Below are positions 3,278 through 45,627 of a stretch of DNA of 64,000 nt, piece after piece (the stretch's first letter is position 1; each line of letters starts with the position of its first letter). The stretch is taken from NCBI GenBank assembly GCA_002269645.1, contig NIVC01000032.1, positions 1,302,001 through 1,366,000 of the forward strand, given 5' to 3'. Below the pieces are notes generated by a model. The model was not told the origin of the DNA. It did no database searches and worked only from the letters and a program-made list of their open reading frames with translations. Position numbers and translations under genes: made by a program. Source of the stretch: Macrostomum lignano (taxonomy: Eukaryota).

Positions 3278-6103
3278 CTCTCGGCCTGAACTTTTTCAGC
3301 TTTTTCAGAGTCTTTGGCAGAGCAGAAAATTTCGCCTTTCCAGCTGCGGCCAACTTCATGAAGTTCATCACCTGAGAGGTCAAAGTCACGAACGAGTGTC
3401 GTTAGCTTTTTTAAAAGAACGCATTGCAAATTATTTAAAATTTTGATAAAACTTTTCCACATTGACTTACGCTAGACACTCCGGATTTAGATGGCAGCGT
3501 GATCACTTTACCGCCGCTCACCCTGGCCAGGTAGTCATACTCGCGCTTGTAAGCTCTGCCGCATAGTTTACCAGTTTTTACAACAAACAGACGAATCTTC
3601 TTTCGCTTCAGTAGCCTGGCAACCGACTTCTTCAGGCGAGCATCCTTGGCCGATGCGTCCGTGAAGAGGAACAGGACCGATCTGGACAAAGCTCGACGAG
3701 CCGCGTCGCGTACGCCGGACAATGAGTACTCCGGACAGTCGCCTCCGCCGTTAGGGCGAATGGCTCTAAGAAATTTGAGCGCGGACGACTTCCTTTTCAC
3801 CGCAACTACCTGCGAAAGGTAAATGTAGTAAAACAGCAGTAAAACAATGAGGTCAATACTGGCTCAACTACATTGACAGTTTGGTACTTTGTACCGGCAA
3901 AGAAATGTTCTGATTTTGATCGAAAACTTCGAGTAGAGATGACCAAAATCTAGCATTTATCTTCCCTAAAAAATCGTACATTCCGCTCACGTTGTCGAAT
4001 TTTAAATAAAAAATTCCTTCTGTAAATCATTGAAATACTTAATTCCCGCATCGCTCTAGCAAAGCGCAGTAATCAATTATCAAAGGAAATAACAAACTTG
4101 ATTTAACAATCGGTGAAAAATATGAAAATTGCTTCGAAAGTAGTGAAAATACTTTTAGCTCGTAATGCTGTACGATTTTATCCACGGAACAGGGTTCTCA
4201 ATTGAGTGTTTGCTGTTTTTACCTTTCGCTTGTACGGATCGCTAAACGTTGCCAAAACGTAATTACGGAACCGACGATTAGCCGCAATAACGGAGCTGAT
4301 GCTGGACCTGACGGCTCTGATCTCAGTTTTCATGGAGCCGGTCACGTCGATGACGAAGCCAAGAGATCCCAGACGACGCGGACGAGGCGGCGGTCTCGGT
4401 CCGCCCTTGCAGATTCTGCGACGCTTTACAACTCGACGATAGCCGCGCGGACAGTAGACGCGAGGGCAGTGGCCTGGTGGAGTGTGGGAGCTTACGAGGT
4501 TATTCAAGTCTTTGCAGTGTAATTAATCTACATTAATCAGCACTTGTCTTGAAATGCTCACTTCTAATCCTTTTGCAGATGCGTTTTCGAACGATTTTAC
4601 AGCAGCCTGAAAAAAAACCAGTTTATTCTATATTTTAATATTTCGGTGAACACTTTTACTTGAATACTTCATGACAATAAACTCTGTTTAATTTACCTGG
4701 ACGGATTCGCCTCAGTTTTTTAACACTACTCGGCAGCTTAAACGGAACTCTACCAGCTGATGCTAGACCGATGTACTTCAGTACCTGTATAGATTGCAAA
4801 CCGAGTATTACAAAATGAACTTCAAATCGAAAGCAAATCAGTCCAATTGTTACAACAATATCGAACAGCTTGACCCAACTTACATATTTTACGTTCTTTT
4901 TGTTTCTTAGCCTGATGACGCCGCCACCGGACCTCTTGGCCAGATAGTCGTACTCGCCTTTGTACGAGCTGCCACAAAGACGGCCGGATCGCACAACATA
5001 GAGCCGAGTCCTCTTGCGCCTGAGCAGGGCCGCTACAGAAGCTTTCAATCGGGCATCCTTAGCCGAGGCATCGGTGAACAGATACAGCATAGAATTCGGT
5101 CTTGCCGCCTTAGCCGCATCCCGGATGGCGGACAGAGAGTACTCCGGACAGTCTCCGCCGCCAGATGGCTTGATGGCGTTGATGTAGTTTCGCACCGCTG
5201 TCGACCTGGACGAGCGCAGAACGCGTCGCCTGTAGGGATCGCTGAAGCGGGCAACAACAAAGTCGCGGAATAGCCGGTTGCGAGCCAGAATGTAGGAGAT
5301 CCGGCTTTTGACGCCGGAAATGTCGTCTCGCATCGAGCCCGTATCGTCGATCACGAAGCCAAGGCTGCCTAGGATGGGCCGCGGTCGGGGACAACGTCCG
5401 CGACGACGATACTTGCACACCACGCGATTCACGAGCACCGAACGATAGCCAGATGGGCAGCGCCTGGGATGCGGCTTGCAACAGCAGCTTTTATGCGACT
5501 CTGCGTGCGTTTTTCCGTGTATATGTAGTTATTTTTGGTGAGTTTATTTGTTCTACTTCGGAAATTCCTCTTTCCTTCAAGAGGCATATTCCAGTGCCTC
5601 ACTGTCTGTCTGTCTGTCTGTCTGTCTGTCTGTCTGTCTGTCTGTCTGTCTGTCTGTCTGTCTGTCTGTCTGTCTGTCTGTCTGTCTGTCTGTCTGTCTG
5701 TCTGTCTGTCTGTCTGTCTGTCTGTCTGTCTGTCTGTCTGTCTGTCTGTCTGTCTGTCTGTCTGTCTGTCTGTCTGTCTGTCTGTCTGTCTGTCTGTCTG
5801 TCTGTCTGTCTGTCTGTCTGTCTGTCTGTCTGTCTGTCTGTCTGTCTGTCTGTCTGTCTGTCTGTCTGTCTGTCTGTCTGTCTGTCTGTCTGTCTGTCTG
5901 TCTGTCTGTCTGTCTGTCTGTCTGTCTGTCTGTCTGTCTGTCTGTCTGTCTGTCTGTCTGTCTGTCTGTCTGTCTGTCTGTCTGTCTGTCTGTCTGTCTG
6001 TCTGTCTGTCTTAGTGTCTGTCTTAGTGTCAGTCTGTCTTACCTGCAATATTGATGCAGACGAGAACTAAAACAGCTGCGAGAAAAATCTCTTTGAGCTT
6101 CAT
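3278..6103 (-). CDS. Gene A: secreted, highly basic protein with two vWA domains (VWA7/hemicentin-N-terminal-like); last exon unresolved
   Basis: Exons 6103-6043 (signal peptide [20 protein letters not shown]), 5500-4884, 4784-4697, 4606-4562, 4473-4223, 3809-3471 and 3371-3278. All introns are GT-AG with consistent phases and no stops. The motifs [13 protein letters not shown], FSDPY, GGGDCPE and FTDASAKD each occur twice. Confidence 0.85.
5602..6010. repeat. (CTGT)n microsatellite in intron 1 of gene A
   Basis: Uninterrupted 4-bp repeat of ~410 bp. Confidence 0.98.
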
Positions 6104-8544
6104 AATCAGACGCTCGACGATGGTATTCAGCAAAGAAAGAAAAAAGTTTCACTGGTTGCGCTCCTTCCACAGCTGAGGCGAGCTGTTTAAATACTTTTTT
6201 CATGGTCACTCAAGCCCTAAGAAAAACAACCCCAAACCAGACGGAAAACGTGGCCGCCTACTTTAGCACTGACACGAGAATAATGACAATGCGAGGGGCA
6301 AGTATAGACGGGGTTTCGTTATTTTTTCGACAGAGTGAAGACTCAAGTTGAACGATGTTGTTTTGCTTGGCTAGCTAAGTTCAGTGCCAAGGCCACGAAA
6401 ATATCTGGCATATACAATAGCGATGCAGGTCCATCATTTTCTTACTCAACCGCTCTCGTCTTTTTATTGTGCCATAATATTTATTGGGCCAAGTTTTGAG
6501 CATCCACCCACCCGAATGGGTTAGTTATAGTTCTAAAAACGCACAGGGCTTTGAAGAGTTGAAGAGGTTTAAATGAAACATCTGGATTGGAACTTGTGCT
6601 GGAAAATCTTTCTCTCTGCAGTAGCTGTTTGTAGCAACTTAGCAATTATATTTTTTATTCTACTAACCTAGAAAAATCCAAGGAGTATAGGTTGAAAAAA
6701 CTTGGCTTAGCGTATTTCGGAAAAAAAACTCTGTCTCAATATGAGATCTGAAAGTCGATTTATCTAAACTAAACGTATCAAAAATAAAGTGGTACTTTGG
6801 TCGAAAGTTTGTCACTATATTAATCCTAACTCCCAACTTAGGAGTGCAAAATAGCGCTATACCTACTTGTGCATAGCATACGCCCTTACTCCAGCAAAAT
6901 TGACGACCTCTCTCAGATTGGGGGAAGGACGGGGGATGAAACTTCCCACGCTTCACTACCCGAAGCCCGAAGGGACTAGATCTTGACTTTGGCCGGTACA
7001 AGGACCACTATGAGCACTTCGTTATAATCTAGTGTAGTAGTCCTTGGGCCGGTATTTCGGTATCTTATATCTAAAGCTGAGTGGATCGATCGACCGGCCG
7101 GGTTTAACGCGTATCTCCTCCTAAACGGCTGGCGACTCAAATGCGGGACTTCTATCTATCTATATATACTAAAGTTGACGTGTTGTTTGTCTGTTTGTCT
7201 GTGTGTGTGTGTGTGTGTGTGTCATTTCGACAACTCCTCCTTGAATAGTGGCAACTCAGCGTTGAAACTTATATGGGAAGATTGGAAATTATCCGAGGTC
7301 GGCTATAGGCTATTTTAATTCTGAAATTTTAATTTCTAAGATCCTCAAAAAAGCAGAAAACGGCGGTCTTGACCTTTGATAATCTTAATTGTCCCCTCTT
7401 TCTGCTTGGAGCTGAAAATTTGCATGAATTTCAAGTGATTGCGCCACAACTTTTCCCTATCTCTGCAGTGTATTTTCTCTCCAGTGGGGGATGGGGCGTT
7501 CTAAATGGCTGCCTGTGTACAATCGGACCCTGGCTCACTGGCTGACTGTATAGACAATTGCGCAAAGATTTGTGTTCTAATTTTCAATAGGCAGCCCTGT
7601 GATTTTGTTGAACCTTGAAATTCAATGCATAAACTTGCGGGCCTCTTTAGCAGGCAGTGAACGTACAATCGATATTTCAATGCTTTAAATCAGAAAGTTT
7701 CAAACGCAAACTGTTGCTCGAGTTTTTAACTTTGAGAGAAAAAATTTATATTGCTGGAAAGAACTTGCAAAGCTGATTTCAGGGATATAAATTGTTTGCT
7801 TCAAATATGAAAACTAAAAGCTCTGCATTGCAAAAACTATTTCCATACTTTAAACTTTCTGCAAAGATTGTACTCATTTTGGCGAGAGGTGAGAGATAAA
7901 GTTGGGGGTTTCGACTTCTAACTGGCGCTGTGTATAGGAAGGGGGTCAGTTGCTTTGTATTGGAGGGTTGATTAGATTGCGCAAACTTTGTGTTAACTTT
8001 AACTGAGACTTATACTGACTAACACAGAAATATATTGCGCAATCAATTGATTCAATTGGTTAGCTTTTTTATTATCGGCCCTGTGTATTAGCTTGGCAGT
8101 GAAATTCAATGTACAAAATTGCGAGCCTCACAGGCAAGCAGTCAGGAAATCGGTAAATTTCAAACGCTAACTGCTCCTTGAGTTTTAAACTTTGAGAGGA
8201 GAGACTTATATTGCTGGAAAGATCTTGCAACGCTGAGTTTAGGGATATAAGTTGTTTGCTTTAAATATGAAAAGAAAAAGCACCGCATTTAAAAAACTAT
8301 TTCCATACTTTTAACTTTCTGCAAAAATTGTACTCAGTTTTGCGAGACGTAATAGATAAAGTTGGGGGAGGGTTCAACTTCTCACTGCTGCTGTGTATTG
8401 GAGGGTTGATTTAGATTGCGCAATGTTTTTGTTAACTTTAACTGAGACTGATACTGACTGACTGTGAAATCGGTTGCGCAATGATTTGATTCAATTAATT
8501 CAATATTTTTATCAGTGCCTTTTAACACGAAGCTGTGCGTAGTT

Positions 8545-45100: not shown

Positions 45101-45627
45101 TAAGCCTTTCTGACACCTATATATTATAGTTACTCGTATATCTAGTTTAGATCTTCATTACTTACTCTGTATACCTCATGTCTTTTATAGGCAAGAAGTG
45201 CTGGGTACAGGAGGTCTCGACCTGCTGTTGCCACGGCATCGGCGATGGCTGCCACTTCCATCACGGACACCATCACCATCACCATCGCCCTCACCACCAT
45301 CACGACCACGGCCACGGCTGCGGCTGCGGCCACGGACACGGCCATGGTTACGGCCACGGCTACGGCTACGGTCACGGCTGCGGCTGCGGCCACGGCCACG
45401 GCCACGGCCACGGCCACGGCCACGGCCACGGCTACGGCTACGGCTACGGCTACGGCCACGGACACGGCCACGGCCACGGCTGCGGCTGCGGCCACCACTA
45501 CGGTCACGGCCACGGCCACGGCCACGGCTACGAACACGGCCACGGCTACGAACACGGCCACGGCTACGAGCACGAACACGGCTACGAACACGATCACCAT
45601 GGCCCGCCTTACCCTTACAAAGGCTAA
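42137..45627 (+). CDS. Gene B: secreted protein with three vWA domains and a His/Gly/Tyr/Cys-rich C-terminal tail, 886 aa
   Basis: Exons 42137-42206 (signal peptide MKVYETLLLPLAAVLLVGVSG), 42307-42522, 42709-43203, 43292-43935, 44027-44120, 44218-44262, 44355-44926, 45012-45099 and 45191-45627 total 2661 nt. All introns are GT-AG and in frame. Three DxSGS MIDAS motifs, GGDCPE/GADCPE and FTDA(S/A)xKD are present. Confidence 0.88.

What the first reader, a model, noticed from the sequence alone, without database searches (positions are those of the whole stretch)
3278..45627. Divergent pair of paralogous secreted multi-vWA genes built from one repeating exon module
Seen: both genes repeat a module of a Cys/Pro linker (CPxGYxxVxxxxxxC) + vWA + a short helical exon (VLxF/YIxxAxxG...FxxxP) + a CC...C segment. 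Exon sizes match across genes: 88 nt (A 4697-4784, B 45012-45099), 94 nt (A 3278-3371, B 44027-44120) and a 45-nt micro-exon ([30 protein letters not shown]). Gene A has DxTGS MIDAS-like motifs and gene B canonical DxSGS. Known: GGGDCPE/FTDA motifs typify VWA7/hemicentin-type vWA domains, which normally occur singly. Inference: this is a lineage-specific family of tandem-vWA extracellular structural or adhesive proteins that I cannot name.
Basis: partly seen in the sequence, partly recalled or inferred. Interest (0 to 1): 0.72.

Follow-up and report, generated by a model that had tools for sequence, protein, structure and literature searches.

The report
Flatworm secreted tandem-vWA protein pair
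Two neighbouring genes of the flatworm Macrostomum lignano encode secreted proteins built from two or three repeated von Willebrand A domains, one extremely positively charged and one ending in a histidine-glycine tail; they belong to an uncharacterised, flatworm-expanded family that probably cross-links secreted glue-, mucus- or shell-like material.

Summary
The window is Macrostomum lignano DNA. Gene A (minus strand, 8 exons, 512 aa) is identical to GenBank PAA93219.1 (BOX15_Mlig025149g1), a model built from RNA-seq. Seven published mass-spectrometry peptides match it exactly. Gene B (plus strand, 9 exons, 886 aa) is 100% identical to UniProt A0A1I8I2M0 over 77% of its length but is missing from the GenBank annotation.

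Corrections:
- The "helical exon" encodes the last helix of the vWA fold, not a separate module.
- DxTGS is the norm for VWA7-type (Pfam VWA_4) domains. Gene B's DxSGS is the variant.
- Tandem VWA_4 proteins also occur in Ciona, scallop, hagfish and a midge.
- The two 5' ends lie 36 kb apart, separated by transposons.

Gene A carries a net charge of about +103 (pI 11.4). Gene B ends in a 124-aa His/Gly/Tyr/Cys tail encoded by a (CACGGC)n microsatellite.

Best reading: secreted, disulfide-stapled, multivalent cross-linkers of an extracellular secretion. The tissue is unknown. I rate this a new variant of a known kind, of moderate interest.

The parts
6186..6193 (-). TATTTAAA box about 90 nt upstream of the gene A start codon
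   Evidence: Read directly from the sequence. Promoter function is inferred.
6043..6103 (-). Gene A exon 1: start codon and signal-like peptide [20 protein letters not shown] (ends in phase 1)
   Evidence: This is the only segment of the protein with Kyte-Doolittle hydropathy above 1.6. Identical to PAA93219.1.
4884..5500 (-). Gene A exon 2: Cys-rich start (SHKSCCC), CPSGY...C hairpin linker, Pro/Arg spacer and vWA domain 1 up to strand beta6
   Evidence: Peptides [23 protein letters not shown] and ASVAALLR map here.
4697..4784 (-). Gene A exon 3 (88 nt): terminal helix of vWA domain 1 ([15 protein letters not shown]...)
   Evidence: In the AlphaFold model this is helix 200-214 with pLDDT above 90.
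4562..4606 (-). Gene A exon 4: 45-nt micro-exon [14 protein letters not shown], phase 1 to phase 1
   Evidence: Present in the transcript-derived PAA93219.1 and absent from the models P0002, P0123 and P0124.
4223..4473 (-). Gene A exon 5: CPRGY...C linker, Pro/Arg spacer and the N-terminal half of vWA domain 2 (DVTGS)
   Evidence: Peptides [21 protein letters not shown] and [12 protein letters not shown] map here.
3471..3809 (-). Gene A exon 6: C-terminal half of vWA domain 2 (GGGDCPE, FTDA)
   Evidence: Peptide [12 protein letters not shown] maps here.
3278..3371 (-). Gene A exon 7 (94 nt): terminal helix of vWA domain 2 ([15 protein letters not shown]...)
2770..2814 (-).
   Evidence: Peptide cFTQILITcR maps here.
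6104..42136 (.). 36-kb spacer between the two 5' ends, made of transposon and repeat DNA. It includes a frameshifted Helitron at about 18-24 kb, repeated units of about 2.3 kb, and GA-rich low-complexity DNA.
42010..42017 (+). TATAAATA box 127 nt upstream of the gene B start codon
   Evidence: Promoter function is inferred.
42137..42206 (+). Gene B exon 1: start codon and signal-like peptide MKVYETLLLPLAAVLLVGVSG
   Evidence: My own prediction; the same layout is seen in the transcript-derived paralog P0004.
42307..42522 (+). Gene B exon 2: Cys-rich N-terminus (CKDCPSKNC...CSC) and the start of vWA domain 1 (DRSGS)
   Evidence: This stretch is conserved in P0004.
42709..43203 (+). Gene B exon 3: rest of vWA domain 1, including its terminal helix (no intron before the helix here)
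   Evidence: Identical to P0006 from this exon onwards.
43292..43935 (+). Gene B exon 4: CSC...C segment, CPEGY...C linker, poly-Pro spacer and vWA domain 2 (DHSGS)
44027..44120 (+). Gene B exon 5 (94 nt): terminal helix of vWA domain 2
44218..44262 (+). Gene B exon 6: 45-nt micro-exon CCSITVVRRCKKVK
   Evidence: Present in P0006.
44355..44926 (+). Gene B exon 7: CPPGY...C linker and vWA domain 3 (DDSGS). The donor is the weaker GTTGGC.
45012..45099 (+). Gene B exon 8 (88 nt): terminal helix of vWA domain 3
45191..45627 (+). Gene B exon 9: CKKCW...CCC segment, then the His/Gly/Tyr/Cys tail and the stop codon
   Evidence: P0006 confirms the junction and reading frame into the start of the tail.
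45253..45624 (+). 124-aa tail (46 His, 44 Gly, 14 Tyr, 6 Cys), encoded largely by a (CACGGC)n hexamer microsatellite. The closest paralog, Mlig027525, has no such tail.

Best explanation
These are two paralogous, expressed genes of Macrostomum lignano. They encode secreted, multivalent cross-linking proteins of an extracellular secretion such as glue, mucus, cement or a shell-like material.

Each module is a complete VWA7-type vWA domain. It keeps most of a metal-ion-dependent adhesion site: D-x-S/T-G-S, the Asp of GGGDCPE, and the Asp of FTDA. I infer that this site binds an acidic group on a partner molecule.

The Cys-bounded hairpin before each domain (CPxGY...C) and the Cys-bounded strand after it (CC...C) sit at the two ends of the domain. 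I infer that they staple the ends together and join the modules stiffly. Two or three modules per chain give multivalency.

Gene A adds a very large positive charge (net about +103), which I infer drives electrostatic binding to polyanionic glycans or surfaces.

Gene B adds N-glycosylation sequons and a His/Gly/Tyr/Cys tail. I infer that the tail allows metal-coordinated or oxidative cross-linking.

Shown here: the gene structures, the domain family and fold, transcript and peptide support for gene A, and the amino-acid composition. Inferred: secretion, ligand binding, disulfide pattern, cross-linking and the tissue of origin.
For: - Organism and transcript-based model: gene A is 100% identical over 100% of its length to PAA93219.1. 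The GenBank models come from an RNA-seq-guided transcriptome (PMC5730564).
- Protein evidence: seven exact peptides from exons 2, 5, 6 and 8 appear in the mass-spectrometry supplements of PMC6410801, under an entry with pI 11.3. Two of them also appear in a second held file. That paper's three datasets are a lectin pull-down from tails, adhesive footprints and amputated tails.
- Other very basic VWA_4 paralogs appear in the same datasets, with pI 10.5 to 11.75.
- Domain family: VWA_4, E 1e-75 and 3e-99.
- Fold: the AlphaFold model of module A1 has pLDDT 87 and pTM 0.83 with canonical vWA topology. Foldseek hits are integrin I-like domains, collagen VI and the mussel byssus protein PTMP1, all with probability 1.0.
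- Conserved residues across 11-12 family modules include D, G, S, M of the DxxGSM loop, DPY, G-DCPE, TDA-KD and a Cys pair.
- Secretion: a signal-like N-terminus and no other hydrophobic segment; the number of Cys in the mature chains is even, 18 and 36.
- Charge and tail composition.
- Paralogs combine the same module with carbohydrate-binding or gel-forming domains: WSC, SUEL lectin, LCCL, and VWD followed by about 3000 aa of K/R/C-rich sequence.
Against: - I could not reach any expression-site data.
- Which held supplement file corresponds to footprints, tails or pull-down is inferred only from file order. The file with seven peptides also lists ribosomal protein P0, so it contains cellular material.
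- Published work attributes M. lignano adhesion to two other proteins, ap1 and ap2, and knock-down of ap2 alone or of both together abolishes attachment. An essential adhesive role for these genes is therefore unlikely.
- The Thr position of a canonical metal site aligns with Gly in this family, so metal binding is unproven.
- None of the four gene B peptides I tried was found in the stored, truncated supplement text.
- The full-length gene B model is my own. Its first 96 residues (exons 1-2) and the last 112 residues, most of the His-rich tail, have no exact match in any database I searched.
Confidence: 0.55

Rival explanations
1. They are precursors of a hardened, quinone-tanned or metal-hardened structure, such as eggshell granules of the oocyte, shell or cement gland material, or the copulatory stylet. 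Gene B's Gly/Tyr/His tail would supply cross-linkable residues, and gene A would supply Lys nucleophiles.
For: The tail is 37% His, 35% Gly and 11% Tyr. M. lignano oocytes lay down eggshell granules, and shell and cement glands surround the antrum in the tail (PMC4490696). A giant vWA-rich transcript, RNA815_13, is expressed in those glands. From my own knowledge, schistosome and Fasciola eggshell precursors are Gly/Tyr/His-rich, and His/Gly-rich proteins harden annelid jaws.
Against: There are no expression data. Gene A has no Tyr-rich region. RNA815_13 is a different protein: its N-terminus starts with a VWD-like sequence.
Confidence: 0.17
2. They are seminal-fluid proteins from the prostate glands, transferred at mating. 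The polycation would bind sperm or the partner's antrum.
For: The family is lineage-restricted and has many paralogs, as is common for reproductive proteins. Gene A peptides occur in material linked to tails. A WSC-domain protein is prostate-specific, and one paralog of this family carries WSC domains.
Against: The held supplement text (26,899 characters in three files) of the screen that reports 76 prostate-limited transcripts contains no von Willebrand, VWA or hemicentin description. The prostate WSC transcript is a short, unrelated protein.
Confidence: 0.1
3. They are ordinary basement-membrane or interstitial matrix proteins that act like hemicentin or VWA7.
For: They share the vWA subfamily (VWA_4) with hemicentin-1 and VWA7.
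Against: They lack every other hemicentin or VWA7 domain: VWA7_N, Ig_VWA7, the galactose-binding-like domain, and Ig, EGF and G2F. In the tree they fall in a separate clade of M. lignano paralogs and unnamed short contigs. A net charge of +103 and a His/Gly tail are not matrix-typical.
Confidence: 0.06
4. They are defensive or antimicrobial secreted polycations, for example the contents of rhabdites or epidermal mucus. The vWA domains would serve only as a scaffold.
For: Gene A's charge. The peptides occur in samples that may contain mucus. From my own knowledge, rhabdites stain as basic protein.
Against: The metal-site residues and the Cys framework are conserved across all modules, which argues for a binding function. 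Gene B is not cationic.
Confidence: 0.07

Closest known systems
VWA7 and the N-terminal vWA domain of hemicentin-1 (Pfam VWA_4, PF25106)
   Same: Same vWA subfamily by sequence: [23 protein letters not shown] and FTDASAKD motifs, about 30-40% identity over one domain.
   Different: No VWA7_N, Ig_VWA7 or galactose-binding-like domain, and no Ig, EGF or G2F repeats. The domain is repeated 2-3 times and flanked by Cys-bounded linkers. It falls in a separate clade.
PTMP1, proximal thread matrix protein 1 of the mussel byssus (PDB 4cn8, 4cn9)
   Same: A secreted protein made of two tandem vWA domains that sits in an extracellular holdfast material. It is among the top structural matches. The title of entry 4cn9 reports a zinc-occupied metal site.
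   Different: Only 13-16% sequence identity, so this is a match of fold, not of family. PTMP1 has no Cys-hairpin linkers, no polycationic surface and no His/Gly tail.
Mlig-ap1, the cohesive adhesive protein of the same species
   Same: An extremely Lys/Arg-rich secreted protein. Its charge-based interaction with polyanions is the published mechanism (PMC6410801). Gene A peptides occur in the same paper's proteomes.
   Different: Not homologous. Mlig-ap1 is 5407 aa with a C-type lectin domain, VWD and EGF modules, and no vWA_4 domain.
Multi-vWA matrix proteins: collagen VI, matrilins, cochlin
   Same: Arrays of vWA domains used as extracellular connectors. Collagen VI domains are among the fold hits. 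The paralog P0009 pairs LCCL with two vWA domains, as cochlin does.
   Different: They belong to a different vWA subfamily (classical PF00092) and have collagenous or coiled-coil oligomerisation parts that are absent here.
Uncharacterised tandem VWA_4 proteins of other animals (Ciona XP_078494900.1, scallop OWF47868.1, hagfish A0A8C4NBE1, Clunio CRK97350.1)
   Same: Two VWA_4 domains in one chain. The Ciona protein has GGGDCPE, many Cys and a helix after each domain.
   Different: The hagfish and scallop duplications are independent: their domains pair within the protein in the tree, while only one Ciona domain and no Clunio domain was in it. They lack the CPxGY hairpin and CC...C strand and combine with other partner domains.
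His/Gly-rich hardening proteins of invertebrate jaws and byssus (recalled from my own knowledge, not tested)
   Same: The composition of gene B's tail: about 72% His plus Gly, with Tyr and Cys.
   Different: No sequence relationship was tested. Here the tail is a short appendix encoded by a hexamer microsatellite.

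Membership tests
Pfam VWA_4 (PF25106; VWA7/hemicentin-type vWA) | Score above the curated gathering threshold (27 bits) | tested here: met
   253 bits with 2 stretches for gene A; 330 bits with 3 stretches for gene B.
Pfam VWA_4 (PF25106; VWA7/hemicentin-type vWA) | Signature motifs DxTGSM, DPY, GGGDCPE and FTDASAKD | tested here: met
   Invariant or nearly invariant in 11-12 family modules, and the same as the consensus of 108 VWA7-like hits. 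Gene B has Ser in place of Thr.
vWA fold | Six-stranded beta-sheet flanked by helices, in the order b1-a1-b2-b3-a2-a3-b4-a4-b5-a5-b6-a6 | tested here: met
   The AlphaFold model (pLDDT 87) has exactly this order. Foldseek probability is 1.0 to integrin, vWF-A and collagen VI domains.
Metal-binding (MIDAS) vWA domains | DxSxS, plus Thr, plus Asp, coordinating a divalent cation | tested here: inconclusive
   Dx[S/T]GS and the FTDA Asp are present in all five modules. The Thr position aligns with Gly, next to the invariant Asp of GGGD. Metal binding itself was not testable.
VWA7 orthologues | VWA7_N (PF25107), Ig_VWA7 (PF23619) and the hemicentin-type galactose-binding-like domain (PF23560) around the vWA domain | tested here: not met
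   None of these is found in either protein, while nearly all VWA7-like hits have them.
Hemicentins | Long Ig array, G2F and EGF modules after the vWA domain | tested here: not met
   Absent. The proteins are only 512 and 886 aa long.
PTMP1-like byssal matrix proteins | Sequence homology to PTMP1 | tested here: not met
   No PDB hit by sequence. The family profile reaches only E 0.13 to other vWA proteins. The fold match has 13-16% identity.
Flatworm temporary-adhesion proteins (ap1/ap2 type) | Expression in adhesive gland cells and loss of attachment after knock-down | not testable with these tools
   The only evidence is peptides in that paper's proteome files. There is no homology to ap1 or ap2 as described.
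Secreted proteins | Cleavable N-terminal signal peptide and no membrane anchor | tested here: met
   The only hydrophobic window (KD above 1.6) is at residues 1-25. The maximum elsewhere is 0.74 for A and 1.47 for B. No dedicated signal-peptide predictor was available.
Flatworm eggshell precursors | Gly/Tyr/His-rich composition and expression in vitellocytes or oocytes | tested here: inconclusive
   Only gene B's 124-aa tail has this composition. Expression could not be tested.

The most novel reading that the evidence does not exclude
The polycationic tandem-vWA proteins (gene A and its basic paralogs) could be overlooked components of material that M. lignano deposits on the substrate, such as footprints, rhabdite mucus or egg cement. 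They would bind polyanionic glycans through charge and the vWA metal site. Gene B would be a recently evolved partner whose (His-Gly)n tail, created by expansion of a coding hexamer microsatellite, gives metal- or pH-switchable cohesion. This would add a third protein class to the two-protein model of flatworm temporary adhesion.
Probability: 0.15. Interest if true: 0.6.

Novelty: new variant of a known kind. Interest (0 to 1): 0.4.

Why it matters
M. lignano is the main model for reversible bioadhesion and for flatworm reproductive secretions, and its secreted materials are of biomimetic interest. A family of compact proteins of 50-100 kDa could be much easier to express and study than the 5,000-15,000-aa adhesive proteins described so far. 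These proteins are built from a well-understood ligand-binding fold but carry a +100 charge or a metal-binding tail.

The locus also shows how a new functional tail can arise from a coding microsatellite, and how one exon set can be reused to build multi-domain secreted proteins.

If the proteins turn out to be ordinary matrix components, the finding is just a correctly described lineage-specific gene family.

Tried and rejected
- Literature look-ups by gene id (Mlig025149, Mlig027525, Mlig016172, Mlig000253) and by transcript id (RNA815_2254, RNA1310_12097, RNA1509_27605) found no paper text.
- Supplements of Grudniewska 2018, Brand 2020, Weber 2018 and the 2023 GBE paper gave nothing usable, because the files were truncated or not held.
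- Lengerer 2018 (tail organ in situ screen) is not held.
- I suspected that the prostate WSC transcript RNA815_80.4 and the shell/cement transcript RNA815_13 were family members. Their stored 5' sequences show they are different proteins.
- Single-sequence AlphaFold of the whole gene A failed (pLDDT 42). Only the alignment-based model of one module was used.
- Sequence searches of the PDB found nothing significant.
I rebuilt it as A2.
- I considered that the 491-aa mass-spectrometry entry equals the micro-exon-less model P0124. I rejected this because the masses differ (55.99 against 55.23 kDa), and 491 aa is simply the 1475-nt transcript divided by three.
- Rfam and tRNA scans of the window found nothing.

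Full report
**What is in the window.**
The window is eukaryotic, rich in repeats and microsatellites. I assembled two gene models from the ORF fragments and the splice signals.

- Gene A lies on the minus strand and has 8 exons: 6103-6043, 5500-4884, 4784-4697, 4606-4562, 4473-4223, 3809-3471, 3371-3278 and 2814-2770. It encodes 512 aa.
- Gene B lies on the plus strand and has 9 exons: 42137-42206, 42307-42522, 42709-43203, 43292-43935, 44027-44120, 44218-44262, 44355-44926, 45012-45099 and 45191-45627. It encodes 886 aa.
- All introns are GT-AG and 85-542 nt long. One donor is weaker, GTTGGC.
- A TATA-like box lies 90 nt upstream of the gene A start codon and 127 nt upstream of the gene B start codon.

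**Identity and support for the models.**
- Gene A is 100% identical, over its full length, to GenBank PAA93219.1, 'hypothetical protein BOX15_Mlig025149g1 [Macrostomum lignano]'. Near-identical copies exist on other contigs: Mlig025149g2 and Mlig016172g1.
- The GenBank models of this genome were derived from an RNA-seq-guided transcriptome (PMC5730564).
- Gene B is not in GenBank. UniProt A0A1I8I2M0 (P0006) matches residues 97-774 exactly, which confirms the junctions of exons 3 to 9 and the reading frame into the His-rich tail.
- The first two exons of gene B are my prediction. They are supported by conservation in the transcript-derived paralog Mlig027525 (P0004), which is 60% identical over 85% of gene B.

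**Protein-level evidence.**
The mass-spectrometry supplements of Wunderer et al. 2019 (PMC6410801) hold an entry for RNA1509_27605, also named RNA815_2254.1 and RNA1310_12097.2, with pI 11.3. It lists seven peptides: [23 protein letters not shown], [10 protein letters not shown], cFTQILITcR, [32 protein letters not shown] and [11 protein letters not shown].
- All seven map exactly to gene A, in exons 2, 5, 6 and 8. Six of them occur only in the Mlig025149 cluster among the proteins I fetched.
- Two of the peptides also occur in a second held file. Other very basic VWA_4 paralogs, with pI 10.5-11.75, appear in the same datasets.
- The paper's three datasets are a PNA-lectin pull-down from 1000 tails, adhesive footprints and amputated tails.
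- I could not verify which held file is which dataset. The seven-peptide file also lists a ribosomal protein, so it contains cellular material.
- None of the four gene B peptides I tried was found in the truncated stored text.

**Check of the observation.**
Pfam VWA_4 matches twice in A and three times in B, and the five modules are 36-56% identical to each other. Three points need correction.

1. The 'short helical exon'. An AlphaFold model of module A1, built on a 120-sequence alignment (pLDDT 87, pTM 0.83), has the canonical vWA order of strands and helices. The exon in question forms helix 200-214, with pLDDT above 90, directly after strand beta6. It is the last helix of the domain. About half of the distant VWA7-like hits align through it. 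A phase-0 intron simply splits the domain before its last helix in A1, A2, B2 and B3, and also in environmental relatives. That intron is absent in B1.
2. DxTGS versus DxSGS. The consensus of 108 VWA7-like proteins is [13 protein letters not shown]. DxTGS is therefore the family norm, and gene B's DxSGS is the derived state.
3. 'Normally occur singly'. Most hits have a single domain. Tandem VWA_4 proteins exist in hagfish, scallop, Ciona and a midge, and Cys-free arrays of 4-7 domains occur in metagenome proteins. In a tree of the domains, the hagfish and scallop duplications are independent of the flatworm ones.

**The family.**
A profile of the module, searched against 1.84 billion representative proteins, gave 3821 hits. 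The top ones are M. lignano paralogs plus four short unnamed contigs: three metagenome or run-assembly fragments, and one near-ortholog of Mlig029053.

In the tree these form one clade, separate from the VWA7-like and hemicentin-like domains.

M. lignano has at least nine paralog groups:
- a single-module protein (Mlig029053);
- gene A's two-module group;
- the three-module Mlig027525 group and gene B;
- combinations with WSC, LCCL and SUEL-lectin domains;
- a 4112-aa protein with two modules, a VWD domain and about 3000 aa of Lys/Arg/Cys-rich sequence.

One 1335-bp metagenome contig carries one module, and its two ends repeat. This is what a collapsed tandem array of near-identical modules would look like.

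**Properties that bear on mechanism.**
- Both proteins start with a hydrophobic signal-like segment and have no other hydrophobic stretch.
- The mature chains have even Cys counts, 18 and 36.
- Gene A is 25% Lys plus Arg, with a net charge of about +103 and pI 11.4, and has no N-glycosylation sequon.
- Gene B is near neutral and has four sequons. It ends in 124 residues that are 37% His, 35% Gly, 11% Tyr and 5% Cys.
- That tail is encoded by a (CACGGC)n microsatellite and is absent from the closest paralog.
- Invariant positions across the family include the DxxGSM loop, DPY, G-DCPE, TDA-KD and a Cys pair: the Cys of GGGDCPE and the Cys of GxLCG.
- Against the calcium-channel alpha2delta vWA domain, the DxSxS loop and the FTDA Asp align with that domain's DVSGS and FTDG motifs, which from my own knowledge hold its metal ligands. 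The position of the Thr in its GITD motif is Gly here, next to the invariant Asp. A metal site is plausible but unproven.
- The structural neighbours are integrin I-like domains, collagen VI, vWF-A domains and PTMP1, a two-vWA matrix protein of the mussel byssus.
- In the AlphaFold model the linker before the domain forms a beta-hairpin (residues 18-27) and the CC...C exon forms a strand (238-247), both at lower confidence. That they pair and are disulfide-stapled is my inference. I had no access to the model's coordinates.

**Interpretation.**
The best-supported reading is that these are secreted, multivalent cross-linkers of an extracellular secretion.
- The vWA modules would be ligand-binding units.
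- The Cys-bounded connectors would act as rigid joints.
- Gene A's charge would bind polyanions, by analogy with the published charge-based role of Mlig-ap1 in the same animal.
- Gene B's tail would give metal- or oxidation-dependent cohesion.

The tissue is not known. Tail glands (adhesive, cement, shell, prostate), oocyte eggshell granules, rhabdite or epidermal glands and the stylet all remain possible.

Published work explains attachment with two other proteins, and knock-down of ap2, alone or together with ap1, abolishes it. An essential adhesive role is therefore unlikely, although an accessory one is not excluded.

The held supplement text of the prostate screen has no vWA- or hemicentin-like description. 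This is weak evidence against a prostate-limited seminal-fluid role.

**Comparison and novelty.**
By sequence the domains belong to Pfam VWA_4. The proteins are not VWA7 or hemicentin orthologues, because every accompanying domain is missing. By architecture and likely role they resemble PTMP1, collagen VI and matrilins, but the resemblance is in fold only.

The distinctive features are:
- the Cys-hairpin and Cys-strand connectors;
- the intron-delimited reuse of one exon set;
- the extreme charge of gene A;
- the microsatellite-born tail of gene B.

The gene models and peptides are already public, but the family has not been described or named. I found no mention of it in the main text of three adhesion papers, and its ids occur in no searchable paper's text. 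I rate it a new variant of a known kind, of moderate interest.

Noticed in passing
window 18000-24000: A Helitron transposon on the plus strand, broken by frameshifts: Helitron_like_N at 19792-20502, PIF1 helicase at 22582-23298, Pif1 2B domain at 23124-23858. This GC-rich block (0.54-0.59) lies between the two vWA genes.
   Followed up: partly
window 8545-8572, 10893-10926, 12745-12778, 16479-16513: Short (CTAACC)n runs, which are interstitial telomere-type (TTAGGG)n repeats. Each sits at the head of a repeated unit of about 2.3 kb that also carries 30-bp 'TTTCACGGAGAGGATTTCGATG' minisatellites and GA-rich tracts.
   Followed up: no
window 37400-41000 (minus strand): ORFs with a reverse-transcriptase-like motif (FIDFRKAFDSV, in ORF 38178-38570), suggesting a degraded non-LTR retrotransposon. 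Two neighbouring ORFs that I scanned gave no Pfam hit at 1e-3.
   Followed up: partly
window 5602-6039: A 438-bp (CAGA)n/(CTGT)n microsatellite fills most of intron 1 of gene A. Similar long tetranucleotide arrays occur at 45997-46156, 50098-50960 and 62869-63103.
   Followed up: no
window 61886-62404 (+) and 50973-51329 (-): A PLAC8-family ORF (E 4e-16), and an ORF resembling a calcium-activated potassium channel beta subunit (CaKB, E 3e-6). These are probably exons of unrelated neighbouring genes.
   Followed up: partly
window 1215-1517 (-): A remnant of a Tc1/mariner-type transposase (DDE_3, E 3e-10), just downstream of gene A.
   Followed up: partly
window 4562-4606: Three database models of gene A or its copies (P0002, P0123, P0124) lack exactly the 45-nt CC micro-exon, and skipping it keeps the reading frame. 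This could be alternative splicing or a gene-prediction miss.
   Followed up: partly
window 42137-45627: Gene B has no entry in the GenBank annotation of this genome. The annotation pipeline dropped transcripts that overlap annotated repeats (PMC5730564), and the hexamer microsatellite in the last exon may be the reason.
   Followed up: partly
L001:1-1335 (ENA ERZ23496033, scaffold_24478): A metagenome contig holding one vWA_4 module plus its helix exon. Its two ends repeat the same sequence, as expected from a collapsed tandem array of near-identical modules in an unidentified organism.
   Followed up: partly
P0142 (PAA86075.1, Mlig022224g1; not in the window): A 4112-aa paralog: two of the same modules, a VWD domain, then about 3000 aa of Lys/Arg/Cys-rich repeats. 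It is another uncharacterised giant polycationic secreted protein of M. lignano.
   Followed up: partly
PMC6410801 supplement, held file 3, near part 10: A mass-spectrometry entry for a 2949-nt transcript with a vWA/hemicentin-like annotation, pI 8.4 and 10 peptides.
   Followed up: no
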